DNA from: Macrostomum lignano
Lineage: Eukaryota
NCBI GenBank assembly: GCA_002269645.1
Contig: NIVC01003370.1
Span: 1-51,045 of the forward strand
Length of the DNA stretch: 51,045 nucleotides
Direction of reading: 5' to 3'
The position numbers were made by a program, and so were the translations under genes. Numbering within the stretch: position 1 is the stretch's first letter; each line of letters begins with the position of its first letter. The notes below the pieces were generated by a model. The model had not been told where the DNA came from. It worked only from the letters and a program-made list of their open reading frames with translations, and did no database searches. Below are positions 20,101 through 49,171 of this stretch, piece after piece.

Positions 20101-23100
20101 CTCTCTCCCTCTCCGACTCTCCGCCTCTCTTCATCTCTCTCCCTCTCCGCCTCTCTCCTTCTCTCTCCCTCTCTCTCCGTCTCTTCGCTTCTCTCCCTCT
20201 AGAATCTGAAATCAGATTTGCCCATGAGCCTTGGGGCCAGCAGACTCCAAGCAGTCATTCCGGGTGCTGACTCTAGCAAAACCCTTTCGCAGGTGGACAG
20301 TCTGTACAAAACTCTCCAGTCTGAGTTCGTCAGCGGCATTGAAAGGCTCGACTGGATTGGGTCCACCGAACGAGCCAAGATGAGGATGAAAATTCAGGCT
20401 GTGGTGGACAAGATCGGCTACTCACCGACTGAGATCCGGGATGAGTTTCTGGACGAGTACTACAAAGATGTGAGCGTAAATTATGATGCTGAAGGTTCGA
20501 TTTAGTACTCTTAGATTAATGTGTCACTCCAGATTGGAATGTGTCACTCTAGATTGAAATGTGTCACTCTAGATTGGAATGTGTCACTCTAGATTAGAAT
20601 GTGTCACTCTAGATTAGAATGTGTCACTCTATAGATTAGAATGTGTCACTCTATATAAAAATTAGCTCTAAACTCTCGCACTGTCACGCACCCCGCCCGC
20701 ACAGCTCACTGTTGACCCGGACTACCCCATGATGGACATCTCAATCAGCTGGCAGAACTTCAAGCGCCTGAAGCAGGGCTCCCTGCTGGGCACCGTACAG
20801 CAGGCCACCGCTTGGAGCGGCGCCACCTTCGACGTGGCGCTGTCCATGACTTCCACAGCGCAGCTGACAGTTCCTGCCGGCATTCTGCAGTGGCCATTCT
20901 TCTCCCCTCAGCTGCCGGGCTACATCAATTTCGCCACCATCGGGCAGCGCATGGCAGCTGAGCTGATCAAGGCTGTGGATGCCACTGGTGACTGCAGAGC
21001 TGCTGCAGCTGCTGGACATGGGATTCCGATGGGATTCCAGTGGGATTCCGATGGGGCTCCAGTGGGATTCCGATGGGACTCCAGTGGGATTCCGATGGGA
21101 CTCCAGTGGGATTCCGATGGGACTCCAGTGGGATTCCGATGGGACTCCAGTGGGATTCCGATGGGACTCCAGTGGGATTCTAATTGGACTCCAGTGGGAT
21201 TCTACGGGACTCCTATTGTAGCATTCTATTGGCCTAAAATTTGCCTTGTGCTTGTGAGATTATATTTGAGTCCAGTTAGGTACCGGCCGATTGAACAGGG
21301 GATGTTCTGACAAATTCGAATCCCAACCTCTTCCTTCAAGGCCAGCTCACGGACCAGCAGGGAAACTCAAATCCCATGTGGTCGGAGCGGACAAGGCAGA
21401 GCTATGTGGCGAAGGCGCAGTGCGTCAACTTCACCTACTGGGACTTGACGGCAGGGCCGTATTGGGTTGGAAACAGAAGTTACTATGTGAGTGATTCTGT
21501 GGGGCAGGGCTGCTGGCTGAGTGATTCTGTGGGGCAGGGCTGCTGGCTGAGGGATTCTGTGGGGCAGGGCTGCTGGCTGAGTGATTCTGTGGGGCAGGGC
21601 TGCTGGCTGAGTGATTCTGTGGGGCAGGGCTGCCGGCTGAGTGATTCTGTGGGGCAGGGCTGCCGGCTGAGGGATTCTGTGGGGCAGGGCTGCTGGCTGA
21701 GGGATTCTGTGGGGCAGGGCTGCTGGCTGAGTGATTCTGTGGGGCAGGGCTGCTGGCTGAGGGATTCTGCGGGGCAGGACTGCTGGCTGAGTGATTGAGC
21801 TGGGGCAAGCGGTGTGAAATCCCATACTGATTAAGTGATAATTACCATCCCGCACTCAGGTGGACATCAACCCGATAATCTCGAGAACTCTGCGCACGGC
21901 AGTTGCTGAGACGGATGCGCTCCGGCTGGTGTCGAAGGCTTACGCCGGTTTCGAGGGGGGTGGGTCAGAACTCCCGCTGCCGCTTGGCCATCTCAACAAA
22001 ATGCAGTCTTTGTTCACTGCCTGGGCACAGGTGAGGCCGAGGGTCAAAAACGGGTACCAAAATGGCGGGTGTGGAGAAGGCACAGGTGAAGAGAGGGCAC
22101 AGGTGAAGAGGGCACAGGTGAAGAGGGCACAGGTGAAGAGAGGGCACAGGTGAAGAGAGGGCACAGGTGAAGAGAGGGCACAGGTGAAGAGAGGGCACAG
22201 GTAAAGTAAGGGCACAGGTGAAGAGAGGGCACAGGTGAAGAGGGCACAGGTGAAGAGAGGGCACAGGTGAAGAGAGGGCACAGGTGAAGAGAGGGCACAG
22301 GTGAAGAGAGGGCACAGGTGAAGAGGGCACAGGTGAAGAGAGGGCACAAGTGAAGAGAGGGCACAGGTGAAGAGAGGGCACAGGTGAAGAGAGGGCACAG
22401 GTGAAGAGGGCACAGGTGAAGAGAGGGCACAGGTGAAGAGAGGGCACAGGTAAAGTAAGGGCACAGGTGAAGAGAGGGCACAGGTGAAGAGGGCACAGGT
22501 GAAGAGAGGGCACAGGTGAAGAGAGGGCACAGGTGAAGAGAGGGCACAGGTAAAGTAAGGGCACAGGTGAAGAGAGGGCACAGGTGTAGACTAAGGCAGA
22601 GAGATACGACTGAGAGTTGACGAAGCCTCTTGGCGTTTATTAGATCGATACGCAGGTTAAATACGATACAACGATTGTTACATAACTGGGTATAAAAGAT
22701 AGAGACAGGGGTGGGTGAAAAGCACGTACATGCTGTACAATAGCAACCCCCACCCCGCTCTAGCGACTGGCGCATACAAGTACACTTGCAACTCACTACA
22801 ATCCTCCCCGGCGAAAAAGATCAATAACATTCGAACGAATAATTCGAAGGAAACATAAGAACAGTAAAACATTTGAAACAATATTGGTATAAAGAATTTC
22901 TCGCTTTCAAATAATTTCCAACAGTCAGTAGAACAGTCACTGAGTCAATCAAAAATTCAACCGGCCACATAGCGATCCACCGGCATCCGCCTACGCACCG
23001 GGTAGCGTCTCGGGGGCGGCTCCTCGTCCGCCTCATCGCCGCCGTGCGCCGCGTGCGCAAAGGGCGGCTGCAGGAAGCACTCTCCGTCAGGGACTGGCAG

Positions 23101-26100
23101 GATCCGCGGCCGCAGACGATTCACATTCACCCTGCGGGTCCGGCCGCTCTCGATCTTTCGAATTTCGACTACCAGATCCCGCTGCGACAGCACCTGCCAG
23201 CCCGGCTCCCAGTAAGGCGCCAGCTTGGAGCCCCTCAGCTCGATGCGCAGCAAGACCTCGTCTCCAGGACTGAACATGCGCAGCTGCCCGGTCGACCTGT
23301 CGTAGCCGCTCTTTTGCTCGCCAGCCGCCTGCACCAGATGCTCCTCGACAGACTCTCGAATTCGCAGCAGGTCGCCCTCGAGCTTGTCGGCGTAGGTGCG
23401 CACGTCATAGAATCGCCTGGACTGCTGGCTGATGACCGGCAGGCTCGGATCGCGCCCGGTGACCACCTTCAGTGGCGGCAGCTGTGTTGAGCAGTGCACC
23501 CGGGAATTGTAGGACAGCAGGATCAGTGGCAGCTTGTCCTCCCACTCGCTCTCTCGCTCGGTGAAACACCTGAGTAACTGCAGCACTGACTTGTTGCCCG
23601 ACTCTGCTAATCCGCTGCCTTTGGGATTGTAAGCCGTTGTTCTTGTCTTCGTGACTCCCAGGCCTCGCAGTGTCTTGAAAAAGCTGAGACTCGAAATTCG
23701 GTCCTTGATCGGAGTGGATGACTCGGGGAAGTCCAGTCTGGGAGCAGATGGAGAGGAAGGCGCGAGCAGTAGTCTCAGCAGTCTGGTCAGGAAACGCCAC
23801 GGCCGTCAGGTACTTGGAAAACTGATCCTGAGCCACCAGCAGGTATTTGTTGCCGCGCGATGATGGCGCCACCTTGACGATGTCGATAGCCACAGAATCC
23901 CACGGCGAGCCGATTGGCAGTTCTCCGAGTGGCGCGCTGGTCCGCGAGCCCGCTTTCTTCTCCTGACAGACAGAACAACTCTGGCAGTGTTGCACGATGT
24001 CTTCAGCCATGCCGGGCCAGTAGGCGGTCAGTTTCAGTGTGCGGTAGCATTTCTCGGCTCCGAAATGACCTCCCAGACCTTCGTGAGCGTTGGTCAAAAA
24101 CTGTTGTCGAAGCCGCGCTGGCACCACTGGAACCTCCCGCAGGCCGTCTGGGTCATTGAACTTGCGCAGTAGAACACCGTCATCATCCAGCTTCAGCTTC
24201 TTCCAGATTCTGCCGAGTTGCTGCAGTGGTCCTGCTCGCCATCTGGGTGCAATTTCTGCGTCCTTGTCCATCGCCTGAATCACCTGGCTGAGCTCCGGGT
24301 CATGTCGCTGCGCAGTTTTGAGCTCTTCAGTGTCGATTTCCGGAGTCAGCTGCGTAGCTGCGACTTCTTGGCCGTGCAGTCTGGACAGCGCGTCAGCATC
24401 TGTGTTCTCAACGCCTCTTCGGTACTTGACGGTGAAGTCGAACTCTTGAAGCAGCAGACGCCATCGTCCTAGCCTGCCGTAGCTGTCAACTCTCTGTGAA
24501 TCGATGTAGGTGAGCGGGCAGTGATCCGTGTGCACCGTGAAATGCTTGCCGAGAAGATAGTGGCGAAAAACTTTGAATGCGTGCAAGATGGCCAGGCACT
24601 CCTTTTCTGTTGCAGAGTATTTCTTCTCAGCTGAATTGAATGCGCGGCTTGAGAACTCGATCACCGCCTCGCCTTGCTTCAGAATTGCACCGACTCCGCT
24701 GCCACTGGCATCCGTGAAGACTGAGAACTCCTTAGTGAAATCCGGGTTCACCAGGATCGGAGGACTAATTAGGCACCTTTTGAGCTCGTCGAAGGCCGTC
24801 TGGCATTCCGAAGTCCAGTCAAATGGGACGCCCTTGCCAGTCAGATGGTGCAGCGGTGCGGCGATGGCAGCGAAGTTGGCTACATGGCGTCGGTATTGGT
24901 TGCACAGGCCGATGAACTGACGCACCTCCTTGGCTGACCTCGGCTCTCTCCACTGCTGAATTGCCTCCAGCTTCTCCTGGCTGGGCTGGGCACCATCCTT
25001 TGAATACCGTGTGCCGAGAAAGGTCACTTCGGGTACCGCGATCTTGCACTTGGAGCCTCTTAATGTCAGTCCGGCTGCTCGAAGTCGCTCGAAGGTCTCT
25101 CGAAGTTGCCGCAGATGATCCGACTTGGTCTTTGAGAAGCAGAGGCTGTCATCGAAGAACGTGAAGACGAAATCGCAGCCGTTGAAAACTTTTGACATTA
25201 GCATACAGAACGTGCTTGGGCCGCCCGACAGACCTTGGGGCATTCTCTTAAATTGGTACAGCGGCATCCCTGGTCCCGGACAGAAAGCAGTTTTTAGCTT
25301 GTCTTCTTCTGCCATCGGAATTTGAAAATAGCCTCCATTGAGATCCAACACAGAGAACACTGAACTGCCTGCGATTCGATCTCTTGCCTCCTCCATCAAC
25401 GGAATTCCCTGTGCAGAGCGAATAGTCTTCTTGTTGATCTCTCGATAGTCTATGGTCAGGCGGAGACTGCCATCCTTCTTTGTCACGTACACCGGTGGGG
25501 CCACGTACGGACTTTCGCTCAGCTCTATCACGTCGTTCTCCAGCAGTTCCTGAATCAGCTGCTCTACCTTCTCCCGGTAATGCACAGGCATTCGGCGCGG
25601 TGGCACTCGGACAGGTACTTCATCCGTGAGAACAATTCGGTGCTGTTGCAGATGAGTTAGTCCCGGCTTTTTCTTGAACAAGTCTTTGAACTCCACCAGC
25701 AGCCGTTGTACATCAAGGTCGTCGGTAGTCGGCAACTCGAACTCTTCACAGCTGAACTCGGGGACGAGTGCGTCTTCGATGTCAACTGGATCGTCGGTGT
25801 CAGCCTGGAATCTGGTGCTGCAGACTTGGCCGGCTTCTTGTGAAGATCCTGTGAAGTCCAGCTGCAAATTATGCTTGCCGATGAAGTCGACTCCAACAAT
25901 GACAGGGCAGACCAAACCTGACACAACGAAAAACAATTGCCGAGCTGTCACTCCACCGACTGTAAGTGGCAATTCGATTTGCCGTTCTATGCTAATTGGC
26001 TGCTTGTTCACTGAATGAAGTTGCACTCTGGCTGCAGTTGCCTGTCTGAGCTGGGATTTTGTCAGGATGCTGGACTCAACTAGTGAGCACTGGCTTCCGG

Positions 26101-27951
26101 TGTCTAACAGCGCCTTCACACTTCTGCCATCAAGCTTGCACTCACACTGCGATAGTCGGTCGGGCGCGACGCTGCATCCGTCGAAGATCCCGCCGACTGT
26201 GAGCGCCGGCCTTGAAGCCGCTGCTGCTGGGCCCGCAGTTACTGCTGGCCGGGGTTGCGGGCCCGCACACCCCAGCCTCTGGCGTTTCCCGGCTGTCGCC
26301 TGCTGTAGCAATCTCTGGCAATGTGGCCGGCCTTGTGGCAGTTGTAGCAGATGATGTCAGACTTCGAACGGTGCTGCGGTCTCGTTGTGCTGCTCGTCCT
26401 CACTCCACAGGCTGCCAGCTGCTGCAGCTGGGAACTCAGGGTGCTCACCGATGCCTGCAGACTCTGCACAGTGTCCCGCAGCTCCTGAACTTCGCTGGAT
26501 TGGCTCGACTGAGGTTGCACCGCTGCTGCTGGGATGCTTGGCGAGCTGTGCTGCATCAGTAGCTGGGCCTTTTGAAGCGCTTGCTCTGAGGTCTTAACGC
26601 TGGAGTCCGCGCGAATCTGCCAGCTCACGGATTCGGGAAGGCCACAGACGAACTGATGGAACAGCAGAGCCTCTTGAGCATCTTTGTTGTCCACGGAGGA
26701 GCTTTTGAGCATCTTCTTTAACTCGTAAAGATACATGCGTGGAGTCTCATTCGACAAAATCTTCCTTGATTTGAACGCCTCCATGACGGCGAAGTGCTCG
26801 CGGTTCGGGTGGAATGCATCATCCAATGCCTGGACTACTTTGTCGTAGTCTGCCTGATCTCCTGCCGACAGTTCCAAATAAACGACGAGAGCCTCGCCAT
26901 CCAAAAATGTGGCCAGTCGCTCCGCTTTGCACGTGTCCCACTTGTTGACTTTTGCGCATACATTGAAACGCTGCAGCCATTCCTTAAAGTTGCCGGTACT
27001 GAAAACTCTGGGCAGCGCTGCACTGGCGGTCAAACCTTTCTCAGCCATTCTAGAATAATTTGCTCTGCTACCAGTTGTAGACTAAGGCAGAGAGATACAA
27101 CTGAGAGTTGACGAAGCCTCTTGGCGTTTATTAGATCGATACGCAGGTTAAATACGATACAACAATTGTTACATAACTGGGTATAAAAGATAGAGACAGG
27201 GGTGGGTGAAAAGCACGTACATGCTGTACAATAGCAACCCCCACCCCGCTCTAGCGACTGGCGCATACAAGTACACTTGCAACTCACTACACAGGTGAAG
27301 AGAGGGCACAGGTGAAGAGAGGGCACAGGTGAAGAGAGGGCACAGGTAAAGTAAGGGCACAGGTGAAGAGAGGGCACAGGTGAAGAGGGCACAGGTGAAG
27401 AGGACACAGGTGAAGAGAGGGCACAGGTGAAGAGAGGGCACAGGTGAAGAGAGGGCACAGGTGAAGAGAGGGCACAGGTGAAGAGAGGGCACAGGTGAAG
27501 AGAGGGCACAGGTGAAGAGAGGGCACAGGTGAAGAGAGGGCACAGGTAAAGTAAGGGCACAGGTGAAGAGAGGGCACAGGTGAAGAGAGGGCACAGGTGA
27601 AGAGAGGGCACAGGTGAAGAGAGGGCACAGATAAAGAGAGGGTTACTGTGGACATGAACCTGTATCATAAGCCTGAACTGAAATTGCAGACATTCTGCTT
27701 CACCCGGGATCCGCTGTACTCATACATCAGGGGAGCCTTGGGCCGCCTCATGCCAGAGGATATTCAGTAAGCCGCTGACTCATGCTGATTTTTTTTCAAA
27801 TTTTAACCCTCGCATTGTTTAATGAACACTGCTCAATTGCAGCGTCAACGGAGTGCTGTCGCTGATCCCAGAGTTCCAGTCAGCCTTCAGCTGTCCTGCT
27901 GACTCAGCGATGGTGAAGCTAGGAGGCTGCAGCCCAATTTTCTATACCTGA
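14135..27951 (+). CDS. Neprilysin/ECE-like (peptidase M13) type II membrane protein, predicted catalytically inactive, ~782 aa, 12 exons
   Basis: Exons 14135-14401, 15959-16393, 16488-16538, 17158-17319, 17414-17658, 18278-18503, 20293-20469, 20705-20987, 21341-21486, 21860-22030, 27690-27766, 27843-27951 (2349 nt, phase-consistent). N-terminal TM; CQTEAC...[17 protein letters not shown]; NYLNWQV; KIGY; [11 protein letters not shown]; VNGVLS...EFQSAFSCP. Confidence 0.9.
14424..15890. repeat. 11-bp minisatellite (ACCGATTCCCC family) filling M13 intron 1
   Basis: More than 120 units with CCCC/CCTT/CCCA variants; a ~110-bp higher-order duplication lies near the 3' end. Confidence 0.96.
16655..17146. 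repeat. 17-bp minisatellite in M13 intron 3, ~29 copies
   Basis: Unit GAGAGTACACAGGGTCA; the array ends 11 nt before the acceptor. Confidence 0.96.
17750..18235. repeat. 22-bp minisatellite in M13 intron 5, ~22 copies
   Basis: Unit ACACAGGATTTACCCGCTACAG, with 21-bp variants. Confidence 0.96.
18780..20198. repeat. CT-rich low-complexity array in M13 intron 6
   Basis: About 1.4 kb of CTCTCTCC/CTCTCCG/CTTCAT motifs, almost entirely pyrimidine on the + strand. Confidence 0.95.
20511..20653. repeat. 20-bp minisatellite in M13 intron 7, ~7 copies
   Basis: Unit AGATT(G/A)GAATGTGTCACTCT. Confidence 0.92.
21019..21210. repeat. 22-bp minisatellite in M13 intron 8, ~8 copies
   Basis: Unit GGGATTCCGATGGGACTCCAGT. 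Confidence 0.92.
21489..21798. repeat. 30-bp minisatellite in M13 intron 9, ~10 copies
   Basis: Unit GAG(T/G)GATTCTGTGGGGCAGGGCTGCTGGCT, beginning inside the splice donor. Confidence 0.95.
22078..22584. repeat. 18-bp minisatellite in M13 intron 10, left part
   Basis: Unit GGGCACAGGTGAAGAGAG with 16-bp variants; interrupted by the LTR element. Confidence 0.96.
22585..22800 (-). repeat. 3' LTR, preceded on the - strand by a polypurine tract (GGGGAGGAT)
   Basis: 216 bp, TG...CA termini; PPT immediately adjacent at ~22801-22809. Confidence 0.95.
22957..26311 (-). CDS. pol: Gypsy pol (protease, RT, RNase H, integrase) with a frameshift in the integrase core
   Basis: ALLDTGS protease; [14 protein letters not shown] and FFDD in RT; FTDASG RNase H; H-x4-H...C-x2-C and DIV/SDQG in integrase. 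The frame changes near 23671 and resumes as [24 protein letters not shown]..., ending at 22957. Confidence 0.92.
26239..27048 (-). CDS. gag: Gypsy gag, 269 aa, CCHC zinc knuckle
   Basis: [14 protein letters not shown]; starts just after the PBS and overlaps pol. Confidence 0.92.
   Translation of the reverse strand: MAEKGLTASAALPRVFSTGNFKEWLQRFNVCAKVNKWDTCKAERLATFLDGEALVVYLELSAGDQADYDKVVQALDDAFHPNREHFAVMEAFKSRKILSNETPRMYLYELKKMLKSSSVDNKDAQEALLFHQFVCGLPESVSWQIRADSSVKTSEQALQKAQLLMQHSSPSIPAAAVQPQSSQSSEVQELRDTVQSLQASVSTLSSQLQQLAACGVRTSSTTRPQHRSKSDIICYNCHKAGHIARDCYSRRQPGNARGWGVRARNPGQQ
26243..26290 (-). promoter_or_regulatory. Programmed -1 ribosomal frameshift signal (G GGA AAC + downstream hairpin)
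   Basis: Slippery heptamer at 26290-26284 in the gag frame; the -1 frame gives KRQRLGCAG of the pol ORF. Downstream GGGGT-G-TGCGGG/CCCGCA-ACCCC can form a stem. Confidence 0.8.
27062..27074 (-). promoter_or_regulatory. Primer-binding site, tRNA-iMet type
   Basis: TGGTAGCAGAG(C) on the - strand next to the 5' LTR; complementary to the ...CUCUGCUACCA end of metazoan initiator tRNA-Met. Confidence 0.8.
27076..27291 (-). repeat. 5' LTR
   Basis: 216 bp; 214/216 identical to 22585-22800. Confidence 0.95.
27292..27630. repeat. 18-bp minisatellite in M13 intron 10, right part
   Basis: Same GGGCACAGGTGAAGAGAG unit as 22078-22584. Confidence 0.96.
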
Positions 27952-29089
27952 ACTTGTTGCTTCAAATCCAGCGCTTTCGATTTTCGACTGTCGGAAACTG
28001 CAGTCCAACACGTGAATGTGCATGAAACTGAAGTTAGAATGATTTTACAATAATTTTCTTTGTAAGCCCAATTCTCGCAAGTAATTGATTTACATGCCTA
28101 TTTCGTTGCCGTGTCAATGCGAGAACCTCATAATATTGTTGTGCACCTTCTGAGGAAAAATACAGTATGTACAAGTTTTGAATTAAAACCACTTCCGAGG
28201 CCTGCAGCCTTAGCGTGTTTTAAGGTGCAGCGGTAACGAGCCTGAATTAGGTTTATGGCAGCGTGCCAACCATGCCAAGCTTTCAAAAGAGACTCGTTTT
28301 AAATACGTACAACAAAAAACTTCCACAAGAAAGCGACAATTGCATTCAATTTCAAACAGTGGGCTTTAAAAAGACTATTCCTGTTGTTCTGTCTATGGCT
28401 GAGACTTCAAGAAGTCCAATCAATTCCGACACGTTCGATTGATCGAAATTCTTTCGCTGGACAATCGTTTTGCTCAATACTTGGTGGATAGCATTGAGGC
28501 CAAAGACTAAAAAGTGGGCAAAGCATTGGCTTGGTCTTGGTGCGTGTAGGCTGTGGTTTAATGCGATTTATTGTGTGCAACCGATGGTTTTCGACCATAG
28601 ACACTTCAGTGAGCCTTACAGGGCTTTTATCATGGACTTCTATACTTAGCATAGAGTAGAGCATCAGTCGTCATCTTGGCGACAAAAGCAAAGATAGGAC
28701 AGGATCGATCTACGTGTCTTAGCAGCATGATCTGACAGCTGTGCTTGGCCGTGTGCTCAAATGCCAGCTTTCCCTATACGGGACTGCAGTCTGGCATCGG
28801 CCGCCATTGTGGTAACCTCTAAGGACGTACAGTGAGGCTCCGGAGTCGCAGTGCAACCGGGATTGCGGCGACCCAGGGACGACTCAATACTACACAGTGT
28901 AAGACACCCTAAGATGCTATTTCATAGGATGTCTTACACTGAGCAGGTTGACGCAGCGCGCAGGGCTCCAATGGGCCCTGGGCCCCAGAGAGAGCAGAAT
29001 AACACAATGACTTACGAGCCGGGGCCCGGGCCATGAGAGAAGCGACCCGCTGCGTCGTAGGCGACTCCAGCTGGCAGGCCGCATCATCC

Positions 29090-30230
29090 GCGCCTGTCAG
29101 CGCCAGTGCAGGAGTTGCTGCTGCTAACAGGTGTGCAATCGGAGTTTCGTTGAGTGCCTGTTGGCACTCCCGCTCTGTGGAGGTCCAGAAAGATGGACCG
29201 CAAGGTGGAGTCCTCAGCCCGATTTTCTGGAACTTGGTTTTGGACGAGTTGCTCAGCAGCCCGTACCCGGATCTGGTTCAAAAGATCGGCTATGCCGACG
29301 ATGTTACCGCCACTGTGGCAGGACCAACACCCGCGGTCCTAAGAGACCTCCTCCAAGCCTTCATCCACAGTGCCGAGCGCTGGGCAGACAGCTGTGATCT
29401 CAGGTTCTCTGAGTCTAAAACCATGGCCATCATATTCACCAGCCACCGAAACTGCAGGATTGAACCGCTCTCCTTCTATGGCAAACCCGTTGCCATGGAG
29501 AAACAAACCAGATGTCTGGGCGTCACCTCGACCACAGGTCCAAACCAAAGCAAACAAAGCTCTCGCAGATCCGCAGAGCTTTCGGCGCTACCTGGGGCCT
29601 TACCCCCGCCTCTGGTGAATTCACACTGCCATTGTTAGACCGGCCATCTCCTTAGCCGGCTTCATTTGAAACAGTGCCCTAGAGGTGAAAGGGGTCCTTG
29701 ATGCTCTTAACAGGGTGCAAGGCCGCGCTTGTCGAGCTATCATGAGCGCGGCTCCCTCCACGCCGTTTGCTGGCATGAACTCCTTCCTGGACATTCCCCC
29801 CTTGACATCTTTATCAGCGGAGAGGCAATGAAGACCACCTAACGTCTGCTTGACGCGGGTGTCCCAATCCAGAAGCAGTTCGCCTTTAGAAAGCGGAACC
29901 TCTGGCCGCACGGCCATCAGCTTCTGCGCCATGGAGCTGTACAATCAGTGCGCCTGGGTGAAGGAAATTACCCCCAGTACATTCTGTGGAGATTACCCTT
30001 TACTCAGAGAGTTAAGCAGCGACCCACGCCTGTGAGCGCACAACCACCTGCTCGCGTAGAGTCAAGTAAGTCAAGTTCATTGCAACCCATATGGAATTCC
30101 GGCCGATTCACCTACGGCAGAGTCCCACCACCTGTAAACACAATCTATGAACTCTCACTAGGCTCCATGGAAATTCCACGGCTTTCCCTGCTAGCCTCTG
30201 CTATATGTTATATAGTATAATTATTACTAA
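29090..30230 (+). mobile_element. Decayed non-LTR retrotransposon RT fragment (R1/LOA-like)
   Basis: PQGGVLSPIFWNLVLDELL, GYADD, RCLGV, HTAIVRPA and RACRAIMSAAPSTPFAGMNSFLDIPPLDIFI in shifting frames. Clade assignment is by motif resemblance only. Confidence 0.8.
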
Positions 30231-30806
30231 TTAGGATGCAGCGGTAACGTGAGTTCTTTCCCTGGCGCTACCAAAACAATGATGGGTTCGGATTTCTGCG
30301 CGAGAAAGAATTAGCTCCCAGAAAACGAAGTTACTGTCCGTCTTTCTTGAGCAGCAAATATTTTTACTTTGGCACTTGGCCCAAGAAATTACCTAAACAG
30401 CCTGGCAACACTCTGAATCTGCTCGAACAAAGCATGGGGCTTAAGATTTCGACTCGGCAGTGAAACAGGATCCATCAGTCGGCCTCCCCGTTAGAAGCCG
30501 CTAAAATCATTCAAATAGATGTTTTTTATAAAATGTTATTTACAAGTTGAAAAAAATTCTCGTCAAAAACATTTCATGGAAACCCGAGGCAAGGATGGCC
30601 GGGCAGCGCGGACACCCCCCGGACAGCGGCGGCTCCTTCGGGAATTTCGGCTCCTCAGTCTGAGCCCCTTTAACTGCAGTGAAGCGCGGTTTAATCCGTT
30701 TCTTTGAGATGAAGAATTTAAGGCCAAGCCGAGCAGGTGAGCAGCGCAGACTCATCGCAAGACCGATTCGAACCCACCGGCTGCCCCATCACTGATCAGT
30801 CCCAAG

Positions 30807-32642
30807 ATGCCGAGCTGTTTCGCACTGACTGCCGCGGTGCTCCTGGTCAGCAGCATGGTTGGCGACGACCGACACACTGTCGCTGAGGTGCACAAAGACC
30901 GCCCGCTCAGTGGCATGCAGGACGCCATGGAGCCACCCGCCGCTGCTGAAGGTATTGCAGGATGCTAGTGTCTAACAGCAGTAATGATACCTGTGTCTAA
31001 CAATGATGCCTGTGTCTAACAATGATGCCTGTGTCTAACAATGATGCCTGTGTCTAACAATGATGCCTGTGTCTAACAGCAGTAATGATACCTGTGTCTA
31101 ACAATGATGCCAGTGTCTAACAATGATGCCTGTGTCTAACAGCAGTATGATGCCTGTGTCTAACAGCAGTAATGGTGCCTGTGTCTAACAGCAGTAATGG
31201 TACCTGTGTCTAACAATGATGCCTGTGTCTAACAGCAGTAATGATGCCTGTGTCTAACAATGATGCCTGTGTCTAACAATGATGCCTGTGTCTAACAATG
31301 ATGCCTGTGTCTAACAGCAGTAATGATGCCTGTGTCTAACAATGATGCCTGTGTCTAACAGCAGTAATGATACCTGTGTCTAACAATGATACCCGTGTCT
31401 AACAACAGTAATGATACCTGTGTCTAACAGCAGCAATGATACCTGTGTCTAACAAATGATACCTGTGTCTAACAATGATACCCGTGTCTAACAGCAGTAA
31501 TAATACCTGTCTAACAAATGATGCCTGTGTCTAACAATGATGCCTGTGTCTAACAACGATGCCTGTGTCTAACAGCAGTAGTGATACCTGTGTCTAACAA
31601 ATGATGCCTGTGTCTAAACAATGATGCCTGTGTCTAACAGCAGTAATGGTACCTGCGTCTAACAAAGATACCTGTGTCTAACAATGATACCCGCGTCTAA
31701 CAGCAGTAATGATACCTGTGTCTAACAATGATACCTGTGTCTAACAATGATACCTGTGTCTAACAATGATACCTGTGTCTAACAAATGTTACCTGTGTCT
31801 AACAATGATGCCTGTGTCTAACAATGATGCCTGTGTCTAACAATGATGCCTGTGTCTAACAATGATGCCTGTGTCTAACAATGATGCCTGTGTCTAACAA
31901 TGATACCTGTGTCTAACAATGATACCTGTGTCTAACAAATGATGCCTGTGTCTAACAAATGTTACCTGCGTCTAACAAATGATGCCTGTGTCTAACAAAT
32001 GATGCCTGTGTCTAACAAATGTTACCTGTGTCTAACAAATGATGCCTGTGTCTAACAAATGATGCATGTGTCTAACAAATGATGCCTGTGTCTAACAAAT
32101 GATGCATGTGTCTAACAAATGATGCCTGTGTCTAACAAATGATGCATGTGTCTAACAAATGATGCATGTGTCTAACAAATGATGCATGTGTCTAACAAAT
32201 GATACCTGTGTCTAACAAATGATGCCTGTGTCTAACAATGATACCTGTGTCTAACAAATGATACCTGTGTCTAACAAATGATACCTGTGTCTAACAAATG
32301 ATGCCTGTGTCTAACAAATGATACCTGTGTCTAAAAATGATGCCTGTGTCTAACAAATGATGCCTGTGTCTAACAATGATACCTGTGTCTAACAATGATG
32401 CCTGTGTCTAACAAATGATACCTGTGTCTAACAATGATGCCTGTGTCTAACAAATGATACCTGTGTCTAACAATGATGCCTGTGTCTAACAAATGATGCC
32501 TGTGTCTAACAATGATACCCGCAATGCCCTCCCAGACCGGGCAGCCGTCAAGCGAGTTTACACACCGCTGTTCGCATTTCTGCGCCGGACCCTGAACGAA
32601 GACGGTGACAAAAGGCGAGACGCCCCCGGCCAGCAAGGCTGA
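30807..32642 (+). CDS. Putative neuropeptide/prohormone precursor, 83 aa, 2 coding exons
   Basis: Exon 30807-30951 (GAA G|gtattg) + 32536-32642 (cccag|AC), phase 1 on both sides: MPSCFALTAAVLLVSSMVG-DDRHTVAEVHKDRPLSGMQDAMEPPAAAEDRAAV-KR-VYTPLFAFL-RR-TLNEDGD-KRR-DAPGQQG*. Not shown in the ORF track. Possible 5' UTR intron at ~30739-30799. Confidence 0.7.
30968..32518. repeat. 19/20/25-bp minisatellite filling the neuropeptide-gene intron, ~75 copies
   Basis: Core AATGAT(G/A)CCTGTGTCTAAC, with +A or +AGCAGT variants. Confidence 0.96.
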
Positions 32643-33067
32643 CTGAGGCCACCGGGTCGCCTGTGTCTCCTGGCCTGACCTGGACTTGCTGGATAAAATT
32701 ATAATTAGCTGATCGCTACACATCTTCAAATGCTTCTAGATAAAATGCATTAATTGCGCCGTGGTGTTAATTGGGCATCGAGAAATGAAAAATTCAAAGC
32801 GAAAATTCACTTGGCTTTTTATACTACTATTAATTTAACCCAACTCTGCGCCCAGCAAAAACTGCTGCAGTCCGCTCTGAGGACATTCTAGTTCGAATAT
32901 TTATTTTACTTGGCAAGCGGTCCTTTCAGCAGGTAACAAAAATCTAACAGACGGTCAAGCAGAACAGCAACTTGTATATTTAGCAGTCATTTTCAATGCT
33001 GCAGATGCGAAATGCACTGAGAAGGGAGGGGCTTAACGCTTAACAGAATGGCCTCCAGTGGCTGTAT

Positions 33068-33502: not shown

Positions 33503-35076
33503 CTAGGCGGCCATGCTGAACCAGCGGCTACCGGGGTCGTACACGAATAGGCGGCTGGCCGAAGGTGTCGCGTGCTCCAGCTCGTCCATCCAGCGCCAGA
33601 TGAGGCGGGCCTTGGCGGCGGGCATCAGCTCGTTGTCGCGAATGTACACCGCGGCCCGGCTGTAGGCCACCGTCTGGTCCGGGTGGCGCCGGTCGCAGCT
33701 GCGAGTGTCGACGTCGTCGCAGCAGGTCGAGTGCAGGCTGGCGGAGCCGCGGCTGAAGTAGGCCATGGGAACGCTTCTCGGCTGCTGCTGCTTCTGCTTT
33801 TGCTGCTTCTGCGACTCGACGGACCGCTGCTCCTGCGGCACTTGGTCAGCAACTGAGATTCGAAACCGGGACCTCGGAGCGTCTGACGGTTCGGATGCGG
33901 GCTCAGCAGTGCCAGGCTCAGCGTCTAGTGCAGTGGGAGTCTTCTGCTTTTGCTGTTGCTGCTGCTGCTGGATCTGCTGCTGCTGCTGCTTCTTCATCCG
34001 CTTGCTGCCGTGAAGCAAAGGCAGCGGCTCGGGTTGCTGCTTTTGCTGTTGCTGCTGCGGCTGTGGCACATTGCTGTGGATCTTGCTGTACAGGCTCGGC
34101 AACCGAGTCAGCACTTCAATTTGCCGCTCTCCGACCGTCCTGCCAGCGGGCGGGCCGCCGCCGCGTCTGTGCCGGTGCGGCAGGCGGCCGGCCATTGGAA
34201 ATGGCAGGTGGAACTGGCCGCTGGCCGCTGCCGGGCCGCTGCGGCTGCTGATGAAGTTGCTGTTGAGGGCCGGCTGCTGGCCGGTTCCGCCGGGCTGCCG
34301 GGTTGTCCACAGCGCCAGGGGGGCGGCATCGAATCTGTGCAGTGCGGGGTCAAAGATATAAGCCCGTATGAATAAAAAGAGTAACTGCTCAGGAGAAAAT
34401 TCTCAAACTCAGAGTCGGAGCAATTGCTCAATCATGAGATTCTCTGAGTCTTAGCAAGTGCTCATCGGGGGTATGATTAAAGAATAAACTCAAACTCTGA
34501 GAATATTCTCCGTAGCTTGAGTAACTGATCAGAATGCTTTTGGCCACAGACAAAAATCGTTCATACGGCTTCTTGCCGTTAGTACGGCTTTTTACGGCTT
34601 CGTAGGGCTTCTTACTTCGTAGGCCATGCTCCAGAGTTTGAAAACCCCAAGAAAAGCTTTAGCTTTAGCTTTGACGATTTATCTGCTTTTTACACTGCGA
34701 CTCGTTCTTGAGTCTGCCAGGAGGCTGCCTCAACGTTTTCTGAGCAATTGCTCAGAAATTTTGTCTATGGTAGTAGTTTTATTCTTATTGACCTGAGTAA
34801 TTGCTCAATCTCAGAGTAAATGCTTGAGTTGGAGCAGTTGCTCATTTTATTCGCATAGCCTATTTCATTCAGGCAGTTTTAGCAAGATTTGCTGTTTTGC
34901 ACAGCGTTGAATGCGGTTTGCCATAGACAAAAATTTGGAGACAAATCCACTCAACGAAAGTTTCGCAAAATCTTTGGTCAGCAGTACGTGTAGCAATTAA
35001 AAGTACATCGAGTCCGATCAATTCCTTACCCAGCGCCTTTGCCTCCGAGATTGCTGCCTGCCGTAGTGCGAATCAT
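33503..35076 (-). CDS. Hypothetical Q-rich protein, ~292 aa, at least 2 exons
   Basis: Terminal exon 34334-33503 (cacag|A TTC, open through polyQ to ...YIRDNELMPAAKARLIWRWMDELEH...) joins in phase 2 to 35076-35030 (GG|gtaagg). Further upstream exons are possible. Confidence 0.55.
34362..34861. mobile_element. MITE/foldback-like element in an intron
   Basis: Degenerate ~70-bp terminal inverted repeats (TATG..AATAAAA.GAG.AACTGCTC... at both ends); repeated GAGYAAYTGCTCA motif; perfect 22-bp palindrome at 34737-34758. Confidence 0.5.
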
Positions 35077-37983: not shown

Positions 37984-40900
37984 TCAGTCGCCTCCGGCGT
38001 CCCTGCAGCGGCGGCACAGAATCGCCGCCCGAGCCCCAGCGGCATCAGCGGCGAGGCTGCGCACCCGGCAGTTGGCCAGCAGCGGCTGCAGCTCCTCGTT
38101 GCCGCCGCCGGCCTCCTCCAGCAGCAGCGTCAGCAGCTCGCCGTACCGACCGCCATCATCGTCTGCCGCCTCGGCCTTCGTCGCCACCAGCGCCCAGCCG
38201 CTGCCAGCGCAGACGCTGCCGACTGCCAGCGAGGAATTCGGCAGCCGCAGCGGGCCGAAGCCGGCAGCGCAGCCGCGGCCAGCAGCCAGGAGGCGGCCGC
38301 TGGTCAGCAGCAGCAGGCAGCGATTGCCAGCGATGGAGGCCGCGGCCACCGACTCCTCCGGCTGCTCGAGCGGCACCGGCAGGAGCTCCAGCTGCGGCAG
38401 CAGCGGCCTGGCGGACTCCGGCAGGCCCAGGCGGCCGAACCGGTTCCAGCCGGTCCCCAGCAGAGCGGCCTGCGAGCCCTCGGTCTCGGCCGCGATCAGC
38501 AGCGCCTCAGGCCCGGCGAAGGCGGACAGGGCTCGGTAACGGCCAGACGGCATCGGCAGCAGCGTCGGGAACGTTGCCGACACTTCGGCGCCAGCTTCGG
38601 CTGCGGGCAGGCAGCCCCAGGCGAACACCTCACCGGAGGAGGCGACGCAGGCGGCGAAACGGCGGCCGCAGGCGACTGAAGTCACCGAGACCTGCGCGAG
38701 CGAGCCGACAACGCGGGGTCGCTCGAGGTCGGCGACGTCGCCGTGGCCTGAGAGAGAGGTTGGGGTTTCAAATCTGCTTTTCTGAAAAAACTAGGATCTT
38801 CAGGATCTTCAGGATCGCCAGGAACCTGGAGTCCCGCACTGGGTCAGCCCAGAGTCCCGCACTGGGTCAGCCCAGAGTCCCGCACTGAGTCAGCCCAGAG
38901 TCCCGCACTGGGTCAGCCCAGAGTCCCGCACTGAGTCAGCCCAGAGCTGCTCACCCAGAGCGCCATCCCTGCCGCAGCCGAAGGTGAGCACAACGCCTGC
39001 ATCGGTCAGGCAGGCAGCGAAGCGGTCCCCGCAGTCCAGCTGGACAACCCTGAAATTATCCAGGCCGACAATGTCGGACATCAACCAGCTGCAGGGAGGC
39101 TGGCCAACCTCCCCGCCAGGCCGGTCCCACCGCACCAGCCGGTCGCGCTTGGTCAGGCCGATCAGGCAGTCGCCGCTGATGAGTTTCACGCATCGCAGAT
39201 CCTCGTGCGGCAGATCGTAGGCGATCTCCGACAACCGGTGGGAGTCTTGGTCCGGCCCGGCGGTGAACAGGTACAAAGACCTGTTGCCGCTCTCCTGGGG
39301 GGGGGGAGCAGATATGCGCATCGGTTACTACTGAAATTAACCAGGTGTGAGGTCACATCATTAGCGCCGAGTCGCTCTGCTCACAGCAGACGCAGGTGCT
39401 GCTGCAGGCACCCTACTGGCGGCAACAGGCGCGCACTCGGCGTTTCGACGACTGCCTGCTGGCTGACGCTGGCGCCCCGGATTCAGTCGGCGGCGTGGTC
39501 TTACTTCGCGGTATTGTGTGTTGTGTTATTGTGTTGTTGTGGTATGGTGTTGTTGTGGTATTGTGTTGTTGTGGTATGGTGTTGGTGTGGTATTGTGTTG
39601 TTGTGGTATTGAGTTGGTGTGGTATTGTGTTGGTGTGTTATTGTGTTGTGTTATTGTGTTGGTGTGGTATTGTGTTGGTGTGGTATTGTGTTGTTGTGGT
39701 ATTGAGTGTTGTTGTGGTATTGAGTGGTGTTGTGTTATTGTGTTGTTGTGGTATTGAGTTGGTGTGGTATTGTGTTGGTGTGTTATTGTGTTGTTGTGTT
39801 ATTGTGTTGGTGTGGTATTGTGTTGTTGTGGTATTGTGTTGTTGTGGTATTGTGTTGTTGTGTTATTGTGTTGTTGTGGTATGGTGTTGGTGTGGTATTG
39901 TGTTGGTGTGGTATTGTGTTGGTGTGATATTGTGTTGTTGTGGTATTCTGTTGTTGTGTTATTGTGTTGTTGTGGTATGGTGTTGGTGTGGTATTGTGTT
40001 GGTGTGGTATTGTGTTGGTGTGGTATTGTGTTGTTGTGGTATTGAGTGTTGTTATGGTATCGAGTGTTGTTGTGTTATTGTGTTGGTGTGGTATTGAGTG
40101 TTGTTGTGTTATTGTGTTGTTGTGGTATTGTGTTGTTGTGTTATTGTGTTGTTGTGGTATGGTGTTGGTGTGGTATTGTGTTGGTGTGGTATTGTGTTGG
40201 TGTGGTATTGTGTTGTTGTGTTATTGTGTTGTTGCGTTATTGTGTTGTTGTGGTATTGTGTTGGTGTGGTATTGTGTTGTTGTGGTATTGTGTTGGTGTG
40301 GTATTGTGTTGTTGTGGTATTGTGTTGGTGTGGTATTGTGTTGTTGTGGTATTGTGTTGTTGTGGTATTGAGTGTTGTTGTGGTATTGTGTTGTTGTGGT
40401 ATTGTGTTGGTGTGTTATTGTGTTGTTGTGTTATTGTGTTGGTGTGGTATTGTGTTGTTGTGGTATTGTGTTGGTGTGGTATTGTGTTGTTGTGGTATTG
40501 AGTGTTGTTGTGGTATTGAGTGGTGTTGTGTTATTGTGTTGGTGTGGTATTGAGTGTTGTTGTGTTATTGTGTTGTTGTGGTATTGTGTTGTTGTGTTAT
40601 TGTGTTGTTGTGGTATGGTGTTGGTGTGGTATTGTGTTGGTGTGGTATTGTGTTGGTGTGGTATTGTGTTGTTGTGGTATTGTGTTGTTGTGTTATTGTG
40701 TTGTTGTGTTATTGTGTTGTTGTGGTATTGTGTTGGTGTGGTATTGTGTTGTTGTGGTATTGTGTTGGTGTGGTATTGTGTTGTTGTGGTATTGTGTTGT
40801 TGTGGTATTGAGTGTTGTTGTGGTATTGTGTTGGTGTGGTATTGTGTTGGTGTGTTATTGTGTTGTTGTGTTATTGTGTTGGTGTGGTATTGTGTTGTTG

Positions 40901-48708: not shown

Positions 48709-49171
48709 CTGGAAGTGGGTGGGAAAGTGAGGACACGGATTCACTCTTGGCCTAGGTACTGTCACTTGCGTCGCCCCAAAGTCGTTGCAGGTCAGCACAG
48801 GTAAGATAGGACTCTAGATCCCGTTGTCTGAGAGATCCCGTTGTTATTGCGACCACAAAACGACTCTGGGGCGATGCAAGTGGACTCTGGGCGCTTTTAG
48901 AATAACTCTGAGGTCGTAGAGTCACGGTAAAATTTTTTAATGGGTGGGCTAGTCTAGCAATCCATTCTAATTCCTTCATCTGATTGTCTAGCCAGATTAG
49001 CGATATATTATACTACTGCAAACAGAAATCGCTGTTGAGATATAAAAAATGCCAAATAAGGTACAAAAAGTTCCAACAGTTGCTATCAATTCAATCGGTA
49101 TCGATCGGAGAGACCGGGAGTACAAATGCACCAAATGGATCTGCTTTATTTAAGACTGAATCGAGCCGCCG

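What the first reader, a model, noticed from the sequence alone, without database searches (positions are those of the whole stretch)
30807..32642. Hidden neuropeptide-like precursor split by a 1.6-kb array
Seen: an 83-aa spliced product absent from the ORF track, with a signal peptide, acidic spacers and KR-VYTPLFAFL-RR, followed by TLNEDGD-KRR. Established: this is prohormone-convertase substrate architecture. There is no amidation Gly on the 9-mer, and I do not recognise the peptide. Inference: a candidate new non-amidated neuropeptide.
Basis: partly seen in the sequence, partly recalled or inferred. Interest (0 to 1): 0.7.

Follow-up and report, generated by a model that had tools for sequence, protein, structure and literature searches.

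The report
Unproven peptide-precursor ORF across a flatworm minisatellite
The 83-residue "neuropeptide precursor" can be read from this Macrostomum lignano (flatworm) contig exactly as described, but the pattern turns up by chance about once per window, has no relatives outside the species and no accessible transcript evidence, so it is at best a weak candidate gene.

Summary
The window is the whole contig NIVC01003370.1 of the Macrostomum lignano Mlig_3_7 assembly.

**What is there**
- The conceptual splice is as described: ATG at 30807, donor AAG|GTATTG after 30951, acceptor CCCTCCCAG| before 32536, stop at 32640-32642.
- The 83-aa product has a hydrophobic N-terminus, an acidic spacer, then KR-VYTPLFAFL-RR-TLNEDGD-KRR-DAPGQQG.
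- The 1,584-nt intron is almost entirely a 19-21-nt minisatellite.

**Against a real gene**
- Equally good "signal peptide plus three or more dibasic sites" spliced ORFs arise 0.8-1.3 times per 51 kb in composition-matched random sequence.
- Synonymous-codon evidence is weak.
- There is no AATAAA or ATTAAA downstream.
- An exhaustive search of 1.84 billion proteins found only two chimeric M. lignano gene models containing these exons. Nothing came from any other species.

**For a real gene**
- The frame is the best of six in both exons.
- The coding signal starts at the ATG and ends at the stop.
- The tight exon-array-exon layout is rare by chance.

**Not tested**
- RNA-seq support and comparison with the homeologous copies could not be checked.

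**Estimates**
- Chance ORF about 0.5.
- Real small secreted pre-pro-peptide about 0.3; true neuropeptide about 0.1.
- Part of another transcript about 0.15.

Interest is low.

The parts
30527..30532 (+). TATAAA, 280 nt upstream of the ATG, at the edge of the GC-rich island that starts near 30560. A possible promoter element only.
   Evidence: By chance this is not unlikely in the AT-rich stretch 30500-30560.
30560..30806 (+). GC-rich (0.57) unique stretch upstream of the ATG, a putative 5' UTR if the gene is real. It holds three upstream ATGs (30576, about 30604 and about 30710), a strong donor-like CAG|GTGAGC at 30736/30737, and acceptor-like AGs at 30798-30799 and 30805-30806.
   Evidence: Stops occur in all six frames and no frame has a positive coding score.
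30807..30951 (+). Proposed exon 1, coding residues 1-48 plus the first base of codon 49. It covers the hydrophobic signal-peptide-like N-terminus (residues 1-16 or 1-19) and most of the acidic spacer.
   Evidence: Codon score is 0.26 bits/codon, the best of six frames. The same exon, frame and donor occur in UniProt models A0A1I8IUA3 and A0A1I8IWM6.
30952..32535 (+). Proposed intron (1,584 nt), GTATTG...CCCTCCCAG. It carries 74 CTAAC motifs, the last at 32506-32510, about 25 nt before the acceptor. There is no AG between 31706 and 32533, an 828-nt AG-free zone.
30962..32516 (.). Minisatellite with unit AATGATGCCTGTGTCTAACA (19-21 nt, with 25-nt CAGCAGT variants in the 5' third), about 75 copies. 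It has stops in all three + frames.
32536..32642 (+). Proposed exon 2 CDS, residues 49-83 plus the TGA stop.
- KR: 32550-32555
- VYTPLFAFL: 32556-32582
- RR: 32583-32588
- TLNEDGD: 32589-32609
- KRR: 32610-32618
- DAPGQQG: 32619-32639
   Evidence: Codon score is 0.20, the best of six frames, but the synonymous-only score is about 0.
32604..32610 (+). Alternative donor G|GTGACA inside exon 2. The older gene model A0A1I8IUA3 uses it to splice onward to 32872.
32643..32900 (+). Putative 3' UTR space. It has no AATAAA or ATTAAA, only GATAAA at 32692 and 32739. A 10-nt partial copy of the array unit (GCCTGTGTCT) lies at 32659-32668. AATAAA on the minus strand at 32905 fits the convergent Q-rich gene (33503-34195, -).

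Best explanation
Most likely the 83-aa 'precursor' is a fortuitous reading. Two short GC-rich unique segments happen to be open in compatible frames on either side of a minisatellite. They lie in the roughly 5-kb gap between the 3' end of an M13-peptidase-like gene plus a decayed LINE (upstream) and the 3' end of a convergent Q-rich gene (downstream).

The building blocks are individually common here:
- In this GC- and Arg-codon-rich genome, hydrophobic Ala/Leu/Val runs after an ATG are frequent.
- So are pairs of basic residues.
- The array has stops in every frame, so any open frame running into it must end there.
- The array is AG-free over its last 828 nt, so the first AG after it automatically looks like a good acceptor.

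On this reading nothing is secreted or processed. The minisatellite is one of the many tandem arrays that fill 35% of this contig.

Shown: the sequence facts, the chance rates and the absence of homologues. Inferred: that the locus is not a translated gene.
For: **Chance rate of the architecture**
- Three qualifying start codons occur in the real window. Markov-3 nulls give 0.8-1.3 per 51 kb.
- Basic residues make up 11 of 83, so about 1.4 adjacent basic pairs are expected and 4 are seen (my arithmetic).

**No relatives**
- phmmer against 1.84 billion representatives returns only two M. lignano models, plus two spurious low-complexity hits.
- Those two models (UniProt A0A1I8IUA3 and A0A1I8IWM6) are plainly chimeric. 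They chain M13 exons, a LINE RT fragment, the candidate exons and antisense frames of the neighbouring genes. Their use of the junction is gene-finder behaviour, not transcript evidence.

**Weak coding statistics**
- The overall codon score of 0.25 lies in a grey zone (0.2-0.35) that antisense and non-coding frames elsewhere in the contig also reach, including 30332-30451, 30541-30660 and 30585-30749 next door.
- The synonymous-only score is 0.07. That is the 36th percentile of real exons but within the top 15% of null frames, and about 0 for exon 2.
- GC-rich islands make up 63% of the unique sequence, so they are not diagnostic.

**Transcript-level signals**
- No AATAAA or ATTAAA lies on the + strand from the stop to 33500.
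- Three upstream ATGs lie between the only TATA-like element and the start.
- The donor GTATTG lacks the +4A/+5G seen in the confirmed donors of this contig: GTGAGG, GTAAGC, GTGACT.

**Array context**
- Tandem arrays lie in intergenic DNA here as well as in introns.
Against: - The proposed frame is the best of six in both exons independently. The upstream island and the post-stop sequence have stops in all frames and no coding signal, so the signal begins at the ATG and ends at the stop.
- Null models that meet the architecture have codon scores of -0.07 +/- 0.09, against 0.25 for the candidate.
- A signal-peptide/dibasic ORF whose intron tightly brackets a tandem array occurs in only 6e-5 of random flank pairs, about 0.003 per window. 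Real array-bearing introns of the neighbouring M13-like gene have the same layout.
- The acceptor is well formed: CCCTCCCAG, a CTAAC motif 25 nt upstream, and the first AG in 828 nt.
- The ATG has A at -3 and is the first in its ORF.
- The published annotation pipeline estimated coding potential with TransDecoder and dropped non-coding transcripts (PMC5730564). Its default minimum ORF is 100 aa (my knowledge), so absence from the GenBank annotation is expected even if the gene is expressed.
Confidence: 0.5

Rival explanations
1. It is a real, lineage-restricted two-exon gene for a small secreted pre-pro-peptide.

Proposed pathway:
- A signal peptide is removed after about Ser16 (VSS|MV) or Gly19.
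- The acidic pro-region is released at R50-x-x-x-K54-R55.
- Prohormone convertase and carboxypeptidase processing then yields non-amidated VYTPLFAFL, TLNEDGD and, from the C-terminal Gly, DAPGQQ-NH2.

The intron has been almost wholly taken over by a minisatellite. Its units each carry a CTAAC branch-point-like motif and no AG, which leaves the AG at 32534-32535 as the only usable acceptor. The narrower claim that the product is a neuropeptide acting on a receptor is a subset of this, with probability about 0.1.
For: - The frame is the best of six in both exons, and the coding signal is bounded by the ATG and the stop.
- The codon score of 0.25 lies within the range of confirmed exons (0.12-0.47) and far above architecture-matched nulls.
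- The tight exon-array-exon layout combined with the peptide-precursor features is expected only about 0.003 times per window by chance.
- Intron 1 of the neighbouring M13-like gene has the same layout.
- The N-terminus is plausible: a 15-residue uncharged core with small residues at -1/-3 for cleavage after S16.
- Arg at P6 of the KR site fits convertase preferences (established knowledge of PC1/3 and PC2 motifs).
- The precursor ends in Gly.
- Gene finders picked this donor in two copies of the locus and this acceptor in one.
- The exon sequence is identical over 71 residues in a second copy. This has little power, because the copies differ by less than 1%.
- An ORF under 100 aa would have been dropped by the published annotation (plus my knowledge of the TransDecoder default).
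Against: - There is no transcript evidence and no homologue in any other species.
- There is a single peptide copy, and the 9-mer is uncharged and very hydrophobic (GRAVY 1.7), unlike most soluble neuropeptides.
- There is no canonical poly(A) signal.
- The donor is weak on its intron side.
- Upstream ATGs are present unless the mRNA is trans-spliced or starts close to the ATG.
- Synonymous-codon support is only about 2:1, and nil for exon 2, which encodes the peptide.
- The architecture alone is expected by chance.
Confidence: 0.3
2. The two GC-rich segments are transcribed but not as this 83-aa CDS. They could be exons of a longer or different transcript: a read-through or trans-spliced polycistronic unit downstream of the M13-like gene, a non-coding RNA, or a CDS that leaves exon 2 through the internal donor at 32604/32605, as in model A0A1I8IUA3.
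For: - M. lignano transcriptional units are often polycistronic precursors, and 39% of genes are trans-spliced (PMC5730564).
- A strong donor-like CAG|GTGAGC at 30736/30737 and acceptor-like AGs at 30798-30799 and 30805-30806 lie just upstream of the ATG.
- There is an internal donor at 32604/32605.
- The two older gene models treat exon 1 as an internal exon.
Against: - The longer models are visibly artefactual, because they run through antisense frames of the Q-rich and NEK/RCC1 genes.
- The frame upstream of the ATG closes after 22 codons, and no other frame in 30560-30806 looks coding.
- No Rfam family matches anywhere in the window.
Confidence: 0.15

Closest known systems
Flatworm prohormone / neuropeptide precursor genes (planarian npp/spp genes; platyhelminth NPF and FLP precursors). 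Named from my own knowledge of the literature, not retrieved here.
   Same: Small secreted precursor layout: N-terminal hydrophobic leader, acidic spacer, short peptide between dibasic sites, terminal Gly. Such genes are often lineage-restricted and missed by annotation.
   Different: No sequence similarity to any of them was found. There is a single, non-amidated, uncharged hydrophobic 9-mer instead of repeated or amidated peptides. No expression or peptidomic evidence exists.
Nematode non-amidated 'FAFA'-type neuropeptide-like peptides (C. elegans nlp-18/nlp-20 family). Recalled from memory, so a lead and not a test.
   Same: Short non-amidated peptides of about 9 residues, flanked by dibasic sites and ending in an aromatic/aliphatic F-A-F-x motif (here ...LFAFL).
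   Different: Only a three-residue resemblance, in a different phylum. Those precursors carry several related copies. No homology is detectable.
Minisatellite-filled introns of neighbouring genes in the same contig, for example intron 1 of the M13-peptidase-like gene (14402-15958).
   Same: A unique exon ends 10-25 nt before a tandem array and the next exon starts 20-65 nt after it, with a GT..AG intron that is almost all array.
   Different: Those exons are validated by Pfam domains and have stronger donors (GTGAGG). The candidate's exons have no independent support.
Over-extended gene models in the public M. lignano proteome (UniProt A0A1I8IUA3 and A0A1I8IWM6), which look ab initio.
   Same: They contain exon 1 with the same frame and donor. 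A0A1I8IUA3 also contains exon 2 with the same acceptor.
   Different: They treat the exons as internal parts of 415-aa and 1,467-aa chimeras, with unrelated automatic names. They are not evidence of an 83-aa product.

Membership tests
Neuropeptide / peptide-hormone precursor (prohormone-convertase substrate) | Cleavable N-terminal signal peptide | tested here: inconclusive
   The heuristic is met: residues 4-18 are uncharged with mean Kyte-Doolittle 2.3, and V/S occupy -3/-1 for cleavage after S16. However, the n-region has no basic residue, no trained predictor was available, and 4% of all ATG ORFs in the window pass the same heuristic.
Neuropeptide / peptide-hormone precursor (prohormone-convertase substrate) | Peptide(s) flanked by mono- or dibasic cleavage sites | tested here: met
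   K54R55, R65R66 and K74R75R76 are present, with R50 at P6 of the first site. The feature is not specific: about 1.4 adjacent basic pairs are expected from composition alone.
Neuropeptide / peptide-hormone precursor (prohormone-convertase substrate) | Maturation signals such as a C-terminal Gly for amidation | tested here: inconclusive
   There is no Gly after the 9-mer. The precursor itself ends in Gly (DAPGQQG), so only the last fragment could be amidated.
Neuropeptide / peptide-hormone precursor (prohormone-convertase substrate) | A spliced, polyadenylated mRNA encoding the precursor exists | not testable with these tools
   No M. lignano transcript data were reachable. Look-ups of contiguous ORFs at the locus found nothing. 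There is no canonical poly(A) signal.
Neuropeptide / peptide-hormone precursor (prohormone-convertase substrate) | Conservation of the bioactive peptide and its cleavage sites in orthologues or paralogues | tested here: inconclusive
   No homologue outside M. lignano was found among 1.84 billion representatives. A second M. lignano copy is identical over residues 1-71, but the copies differ by less than 1% overall, so this carries no information. The roughly 95%-identical homeologous copy could not be fetched.
Neuropeptide / peptide-hormone precursor (prohormone-convertase substrate) | Architecture occurs more often than chance allows | tested here: not met
   Architecture alone gives 0.8-1.3 chance models per 51 kb. 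It becomes rare (about 0.003 per window) only when the post hoc feature 'intron tightly brackets an array' is added.
Neuropeptide / peptide-hormone precursor (prohormone-convertase substrate) | Expression in neurons or secretory cells and a cognate receptor | not testable with these tools
   Needs in situ hybridisation, single-cell data and receptor assays.
Protein-coding exon of M. lignano (any kind) | Codon usage and frame periodicity like confirmed exons of the same contig | tested here: inconclusive
   GC1/2/3 is 0.73/0.49/0.70, against 0.52-0.76/0.39-0.61/0.67-0.86 in confirmed exons. The codon score of 0.25 is the best of six frames in both exons, but it lies in a grey zone. The synonymous-only score gives only about 2:1 for coding.

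The most novel reading that the evidence does not exclude
A Macrostomum-specific orphan prohormone gene that current annotations miss because its ORF is under 100 aa. It would yield a non-amidated hydrophobic nonapeptide (VYTPLFAFL) and possibly DAPGQQ-NH2. Its single intron has been almost completely replaced by a minisatellite. The repeat units supply about 74 branch-point consensus motifs and an 828-nt AG-free zone, so splicing is forced to one acceptor.
Probability: 0.1. Interest if true: 0.4.

Novelty: not a real feature. Interest (0 to 1): 0.15.

Why it matters
If real, it would add one lineage-restricted, non-amidated peptide precursor to the poorly charted peptide repertoire of a transgenic flatworm model. 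It would also show that ORFs under 100 aa next to tandem arrays are being lost from the annotation. That is useful but incremental.

If it is a chance ORF, as I think slightly more likely, the value is methodological. In GC- and Arg-rich, repeat-laden genomes the 'signal peptide plus dibasic sites' pattern is not evidence on its own. Each such candidate needs a junction read or a homeolog comparison before it is followed up.

Tried and rejected
**Homology searches**
- Word-indexed homology searches were run with the 83-aa product, the RCC1 exon and the M13 exon. All came back empty.
- That tool also missed UniProt A0A1I8IUA3, which shares 71 identical residues with the query. I therefore treat its negatives for this organism as uninformative.

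**Route to the homeologous loci**
- I planned to reach them through paralogues of the neighbouring genes. This failed because those searches returned nothing.
- The only duplicated gene I could identify (Mlig015506 g1/g3) lies 24 kb from the candidate. That is beyond the 10-kb flank, and its proteins are not of the kind the contig look-up accepts.

**Exact look-ups**
- Five contiguous ORFs at the locus were tried: the unspliced exon 1 ORF, the exon 2 ORF, two upstream ORFs and an antisense ORF. None is on record.

**Literature**
- Searches for the peptide string and sub-strings found nothing.
- Searches for M. lignano neuropeptide lists found nothing usable.
- The 2015 genome paper is not held.

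**Ideas rejected**
- That exon 1 belongs to the LINE upstream. The LINE's RT and C-terminal frames fade out by about 30.2 kb, AT-rich sequence intervenes, and no TE protein matches the product.
- That the exons code on the minus strand.
- That a known RNA family sits here.
- That GC-rich islands mark exons. They make up 63% of the unique sequence.

**A test I had to discount**
- I first read the tight exon-array-exon test as 4 of 4 other hits being real introns.
- On inspection two of them have a real acceptor but a chance donor or frame, so I discounted that evidence.
Full report
**Source and setting**

An exact look-up of the 514-aa ORF at 4946-6490 shows that the window is the whole 51,045-bp contig NIVC01003370.1 of assembly GCA_002269645.1. 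The NIVC prefix is the Macrostomum lignano Mlig_3_7 genome (PMC5730564). [quoted passage not shown] It also reports introns averaging 1.1-1.4 kb, 39% of genes trans-spliced, and 180 Mb of duplicated blocks.

In this contig tandem arrays cover 35% of the bases. The genes and elements I could place are:
- An M13-peptidase-like gene on the + strand, running from 14135 to about 27950, with arrays in most introns.
- A Ty3/gypsy element at about 22.6-27.3 kb, inside that gene.
- A decayed LINE reverse-transcriptase fragment at about 29.0-30.2 kb.
- A Q-rich ORF on the minus strand at 33503-34195.
- A NEK-like kinase gene with RCC1 repeats on the minus strand, 44.4 to 37.9 kb.
- Nop14 on the minus strand, 48.8 to 46.4 kb.

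The finding therefore sits in a roughly 5-kb gap between the M13-like gene plus the LINE and the 3' end of a convergent gene.

**Checking the observation**

The sequence facts hold.
- The ATG at 30807 has A at -3 and is the first ATG after an in-frame stop 22 codons upstream.
- The donor is AAG|GTATTG after 30951 and the acceptor is CCCTCCCAG| before 32536. The phases are compatible.
- The stop is at 32640-32642.
Its basic sites are K54R55, R65R66 and K74R75R76, and the spacer carries 8 acidic and 4 basic residues.
- Residues 4-18 form a 15-residue uncharged hydrophobic core.
- The 1,584-nt intron is 9 nt, then about 75 units of AATGATGCCTGTGTCTAACA, then 19 nt.

The precursor ends in Gly, so its last fragment could be amidated. 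There is also a second donor-like site, G|GTGACA, inside exon 2.

**Is it more than chance?**

I wrote the architecture down as explicit rules:
- an ATG ORF with a signal-peptide-like start;
- one GT..AG intron of 40-3000 nt, with donor and acceptor scores at least as good as the candidate's;
- a product of 50-200 aa;
- at least three dibasic sites, with a 5-30-residue peptide between two of them.

The real window gives three qualifying start codons. Markov-3 random sequences of the same composition give 0.8-1.3 per 51 kb. With unrestricted splice sites, ten start codons qualify. The architecture on its own is therefore what chance delivers about once per window.

Two further properties are less easily explained by chance.
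- The chance models have codon scores of -0.07 +/- 0.09, against 0.25 for the candidate.
- A qualifying model whose intron tightly brackets a tandem array occurs in only 6e-5 of random flank pairs, about 0.003 per window.

Both points need discounting.
- The tightness criterion was chosen after seeing the case.
- Random flank pairs meet the bare exon-array-exon criterion 2.3-3.1% of the time, so about one chance case is expected among the 46 array-strand combinations.
- Five combinations qualify. Of the four others, only M13 intron 1 is right in every respect. Two have a real acceptor but a fortuitous donor or frame, and one is unverified.

**Coding statistics**

I trained a codon log-odds table on confirmed exons of this contig.
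- The proposed frame scores 0.26 in exon 1 and 0.20 in exon 2. It is the best of six frames in each.
- The island upstream of the ATG and the sequence after the stop have stops in all frames and no positive frame.
- Confirmed exons score 0.12-0.47 by leave-one-out.
- Values of 0.2-0.35 are also reached by antisense and non-coding frames, including three segments immediately upstream of the candidate.

A synonymous-only score removes this effect.
- It gives 0.07 for the candidate, 0.12 for exon 1 and 0.01 for exon 2.
- Real exon chunks give 0.09 +/- 0.16 and null frames give -0.13 +/- 0.18.
- By my estimate that is roughly 2:1 in favour of coding.

GC-rich islands are not diagnostic, because they make up 63% of the unique sequence.

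**Signals around the ORF**

In favour:
- The acceptor is strong. The last CTAAC motif lies 25 nt upstream, and it is the first AG in 828 nt.
- A TATAAA at 30527 sits at the edge of the GC-rich island.

Against:
- The donor's intron side (GTATTG) is weaker than the confirmed donors here.
- Three upstream ATGs lie between the TATA-like element and the start.
- No AATAAA or ATTAAA lies on the + strand in the 850 nt after the stop. Only GATAAA occurs, at 32692 and 32739.
- The AATAAA on the minus strand at 32905 fits the convergent gene.

An acceptor-like AG at 30798-30799 or 30805-30806 could serve trans-splicing, which would remove the upstream ATGs. That is conjecture.

**Relatives**

The exhaustive phmmer search of 1.84 billion representative proteins found four hits. 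Two are spurious low-complexity matches. The other two are M. lignano UniProt entries:
- A0A1I8IUA3 (415 aa) contains residues 1-71 of the product across the same junction. It then leaves exon 2 through the internal donor.
- A0A1I8IWM6 (1,467 aa) contains exon 1 with the same donor and skips exon 2.

Mapping both onto the window shows they are chimeras. They join M13 exons, the LINE RT fragment, the candidate exons and antisense frames of the Q-rich and NEK/RCC1 genes. They look like ab initio gene-finder output. The accession series points to the earlier WormBase ParaSite annotation (my inference from the series), and that resource describes a MAKER-based pipeline for some of its genomes. They show that gene finders like these splice sites. 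They are not transcript evidence.

No protein from any other species matches, and Pfam finds nothing. The peptide string and its sub-strings occur in no searchable paper.

The word-indexed homology tool returned nothing for three queries. It also missed A0A1I8IUA3, so those negatives carry no weight.

**What could not be done**

- No M. lignano transcript data are reachable.
I did not seek it by another tool.
- Five contiguous ORFs at the locus are not on record.
- The assembly holds two more copies of this region. The neighbouring gene Mlig015506 has copies g1 and g3, at 95% and 99% protein identity. The 95% copy would give a real test of selective constraint, but it could not be fetched.
- The published annotation estimated coding potential with TransDecoder and dropped non-coding transcripts and those overlapping repeats. 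Its default minimum ORF is 100 aa (my knowledge), so an expressed 83-aa ORF would be absent from GenBank in any case.

**Weighing**

These are my own rough estimates.
- I assumed about 0.01-0.05 true small secreted dibasic-site genes per 51 kb.
- I allowed about 0.04-0.1 for such a gene having an array-filled, tightly bracketed intron and passing my thresholds.
- I set that against a chance rate of about 0.003 for the same joint pattern.
- I applied a coding likelihood ratio of about 2-4, and about 0.4 for the missing poly(A) signal and the upstream ATGs.

This puts the posterior for a real gene at about 15-45%. My working figures are 0.5 for a fortuitous ORF, 0.3 for a real small secreted pre-pro-peptide (about 0.1 for a true neuropeptide), and 0.15 for exons of some other transcript.

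**Comparison with known systems**

If real, it would work like any prohormone: signal-peptide removal, convertase cleavage at KR, RR and KRR, carboxypeptidase trimming, and possibly amidation of the last fragment. It shows no sequence relationship to known flatworm precursors. The ...FAFL ending recalls the nematode non-amidated FAFA-type peptides, but this is a three-residue resemblance recalled from memory. Its intron resembles the array-filled introns of the neighbouring genes.

**Verdict**

The neuropeptide reading is neither supported nor refuted. Interest is low until a junction read or a homeolog comparison is in hand.

Noticed in passing
window 14135-27950 (+), motif position about 20939-20965: The M13 (neprilysin-like) peptidase homologue has no HExxH anywhere in the six-frame translation. 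Where the zinc motif is expected, by my by-eye alignment, the sequence reads IGQRMAAEL. It is probably a catalytically inactive family member. Most of its introns are filled by different minisatellites.
   Followed up: partly
window about 22581-27291 (-): A young Ty3/gypsy LTR retrotransposon, with at least 220 nt of LTR 99% identical between the two ends and long gag and pol ORFs. It sits inside a 17-nt minisatellite and splits it into 22071-22590 and 27290-27642, within an intron of the M13-like gene. That gene's last two exons lie beyond the element, at 27687-27764 and 27844-27950.
   Followed up: partly
window 29018-30200 (+): A decayed LINE fragment with an RVT_1 hit (E = 1e-9) and frameshifted C-terminal frames lies directly upstream of the candidate. 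The older gene models fuse it to the M13 exons and to the candidate.
   Followed up: partly
UniProt A0A1I8IUA3 and A0A1I8IWM6 (P0001, P0002): Two public M. lignano protein entries are chimeric models spanning several unrelated genes, a LINE fragment and antisense frames. Their automatic names ('Alpha,alpha-trehalase' and 'TcA_TcB_BD domain-containing protein') fit nothing I identified among the parts that map to this window.
   Followed up: partly
window 4946-6490 (+); proteins P0005-P0007: The 514-aa gene Mlig015506 exists in three copies in the assembly: this contig, PAA53131.1 on a 74-kb contig (95% identity) and PAA90966.1 on an 891-kb contig (99%). This region of the contig therefore appears to be triplicated, consistent with the known hidden polyploidy. 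The other copies are the natural comparators for any feature here.
   Followed up: partly
window 32659-32668: A 10-nt exact partial copy of the minisatellite unit (GCCTGTGTCT) lies 17 nt after the proposed stop codon. The 142-nt unique segment holding exon 2 is therefore flanked by array-like sequence on both sides. By my rough estimate the chance of this is about 0.02. Its meaning is unknown.
   Followed up: no
window 31706-32533: The 3' half of the array contains no AG dinucleotide for 828 nt, while every unit carries CTAAC. Any transcript crossing it on the + strand would be steered to the AG at 32534-32535.
   Followed up: partly
window 37984-44419 (-) and 46391-48798 (-): A NEK-like kinase gene with C-terminal RCC1 repeats has arrays of up to 1.7 kb in its introns. 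A Nop14 homologue lies next to it. Long ORFs on the opposite strand of these genes and inside the arrays are artefacts of GC-rich and repetitive sequence.
   Followed up: partly
tool behaviour: The word-indexed protein search returned nothing for three M. lignano queries, although the exhaustive search shows that matching M. lignano proteins are in the collection. Negative results from that tool should not be trusted for this organism.
   Followed up: yes
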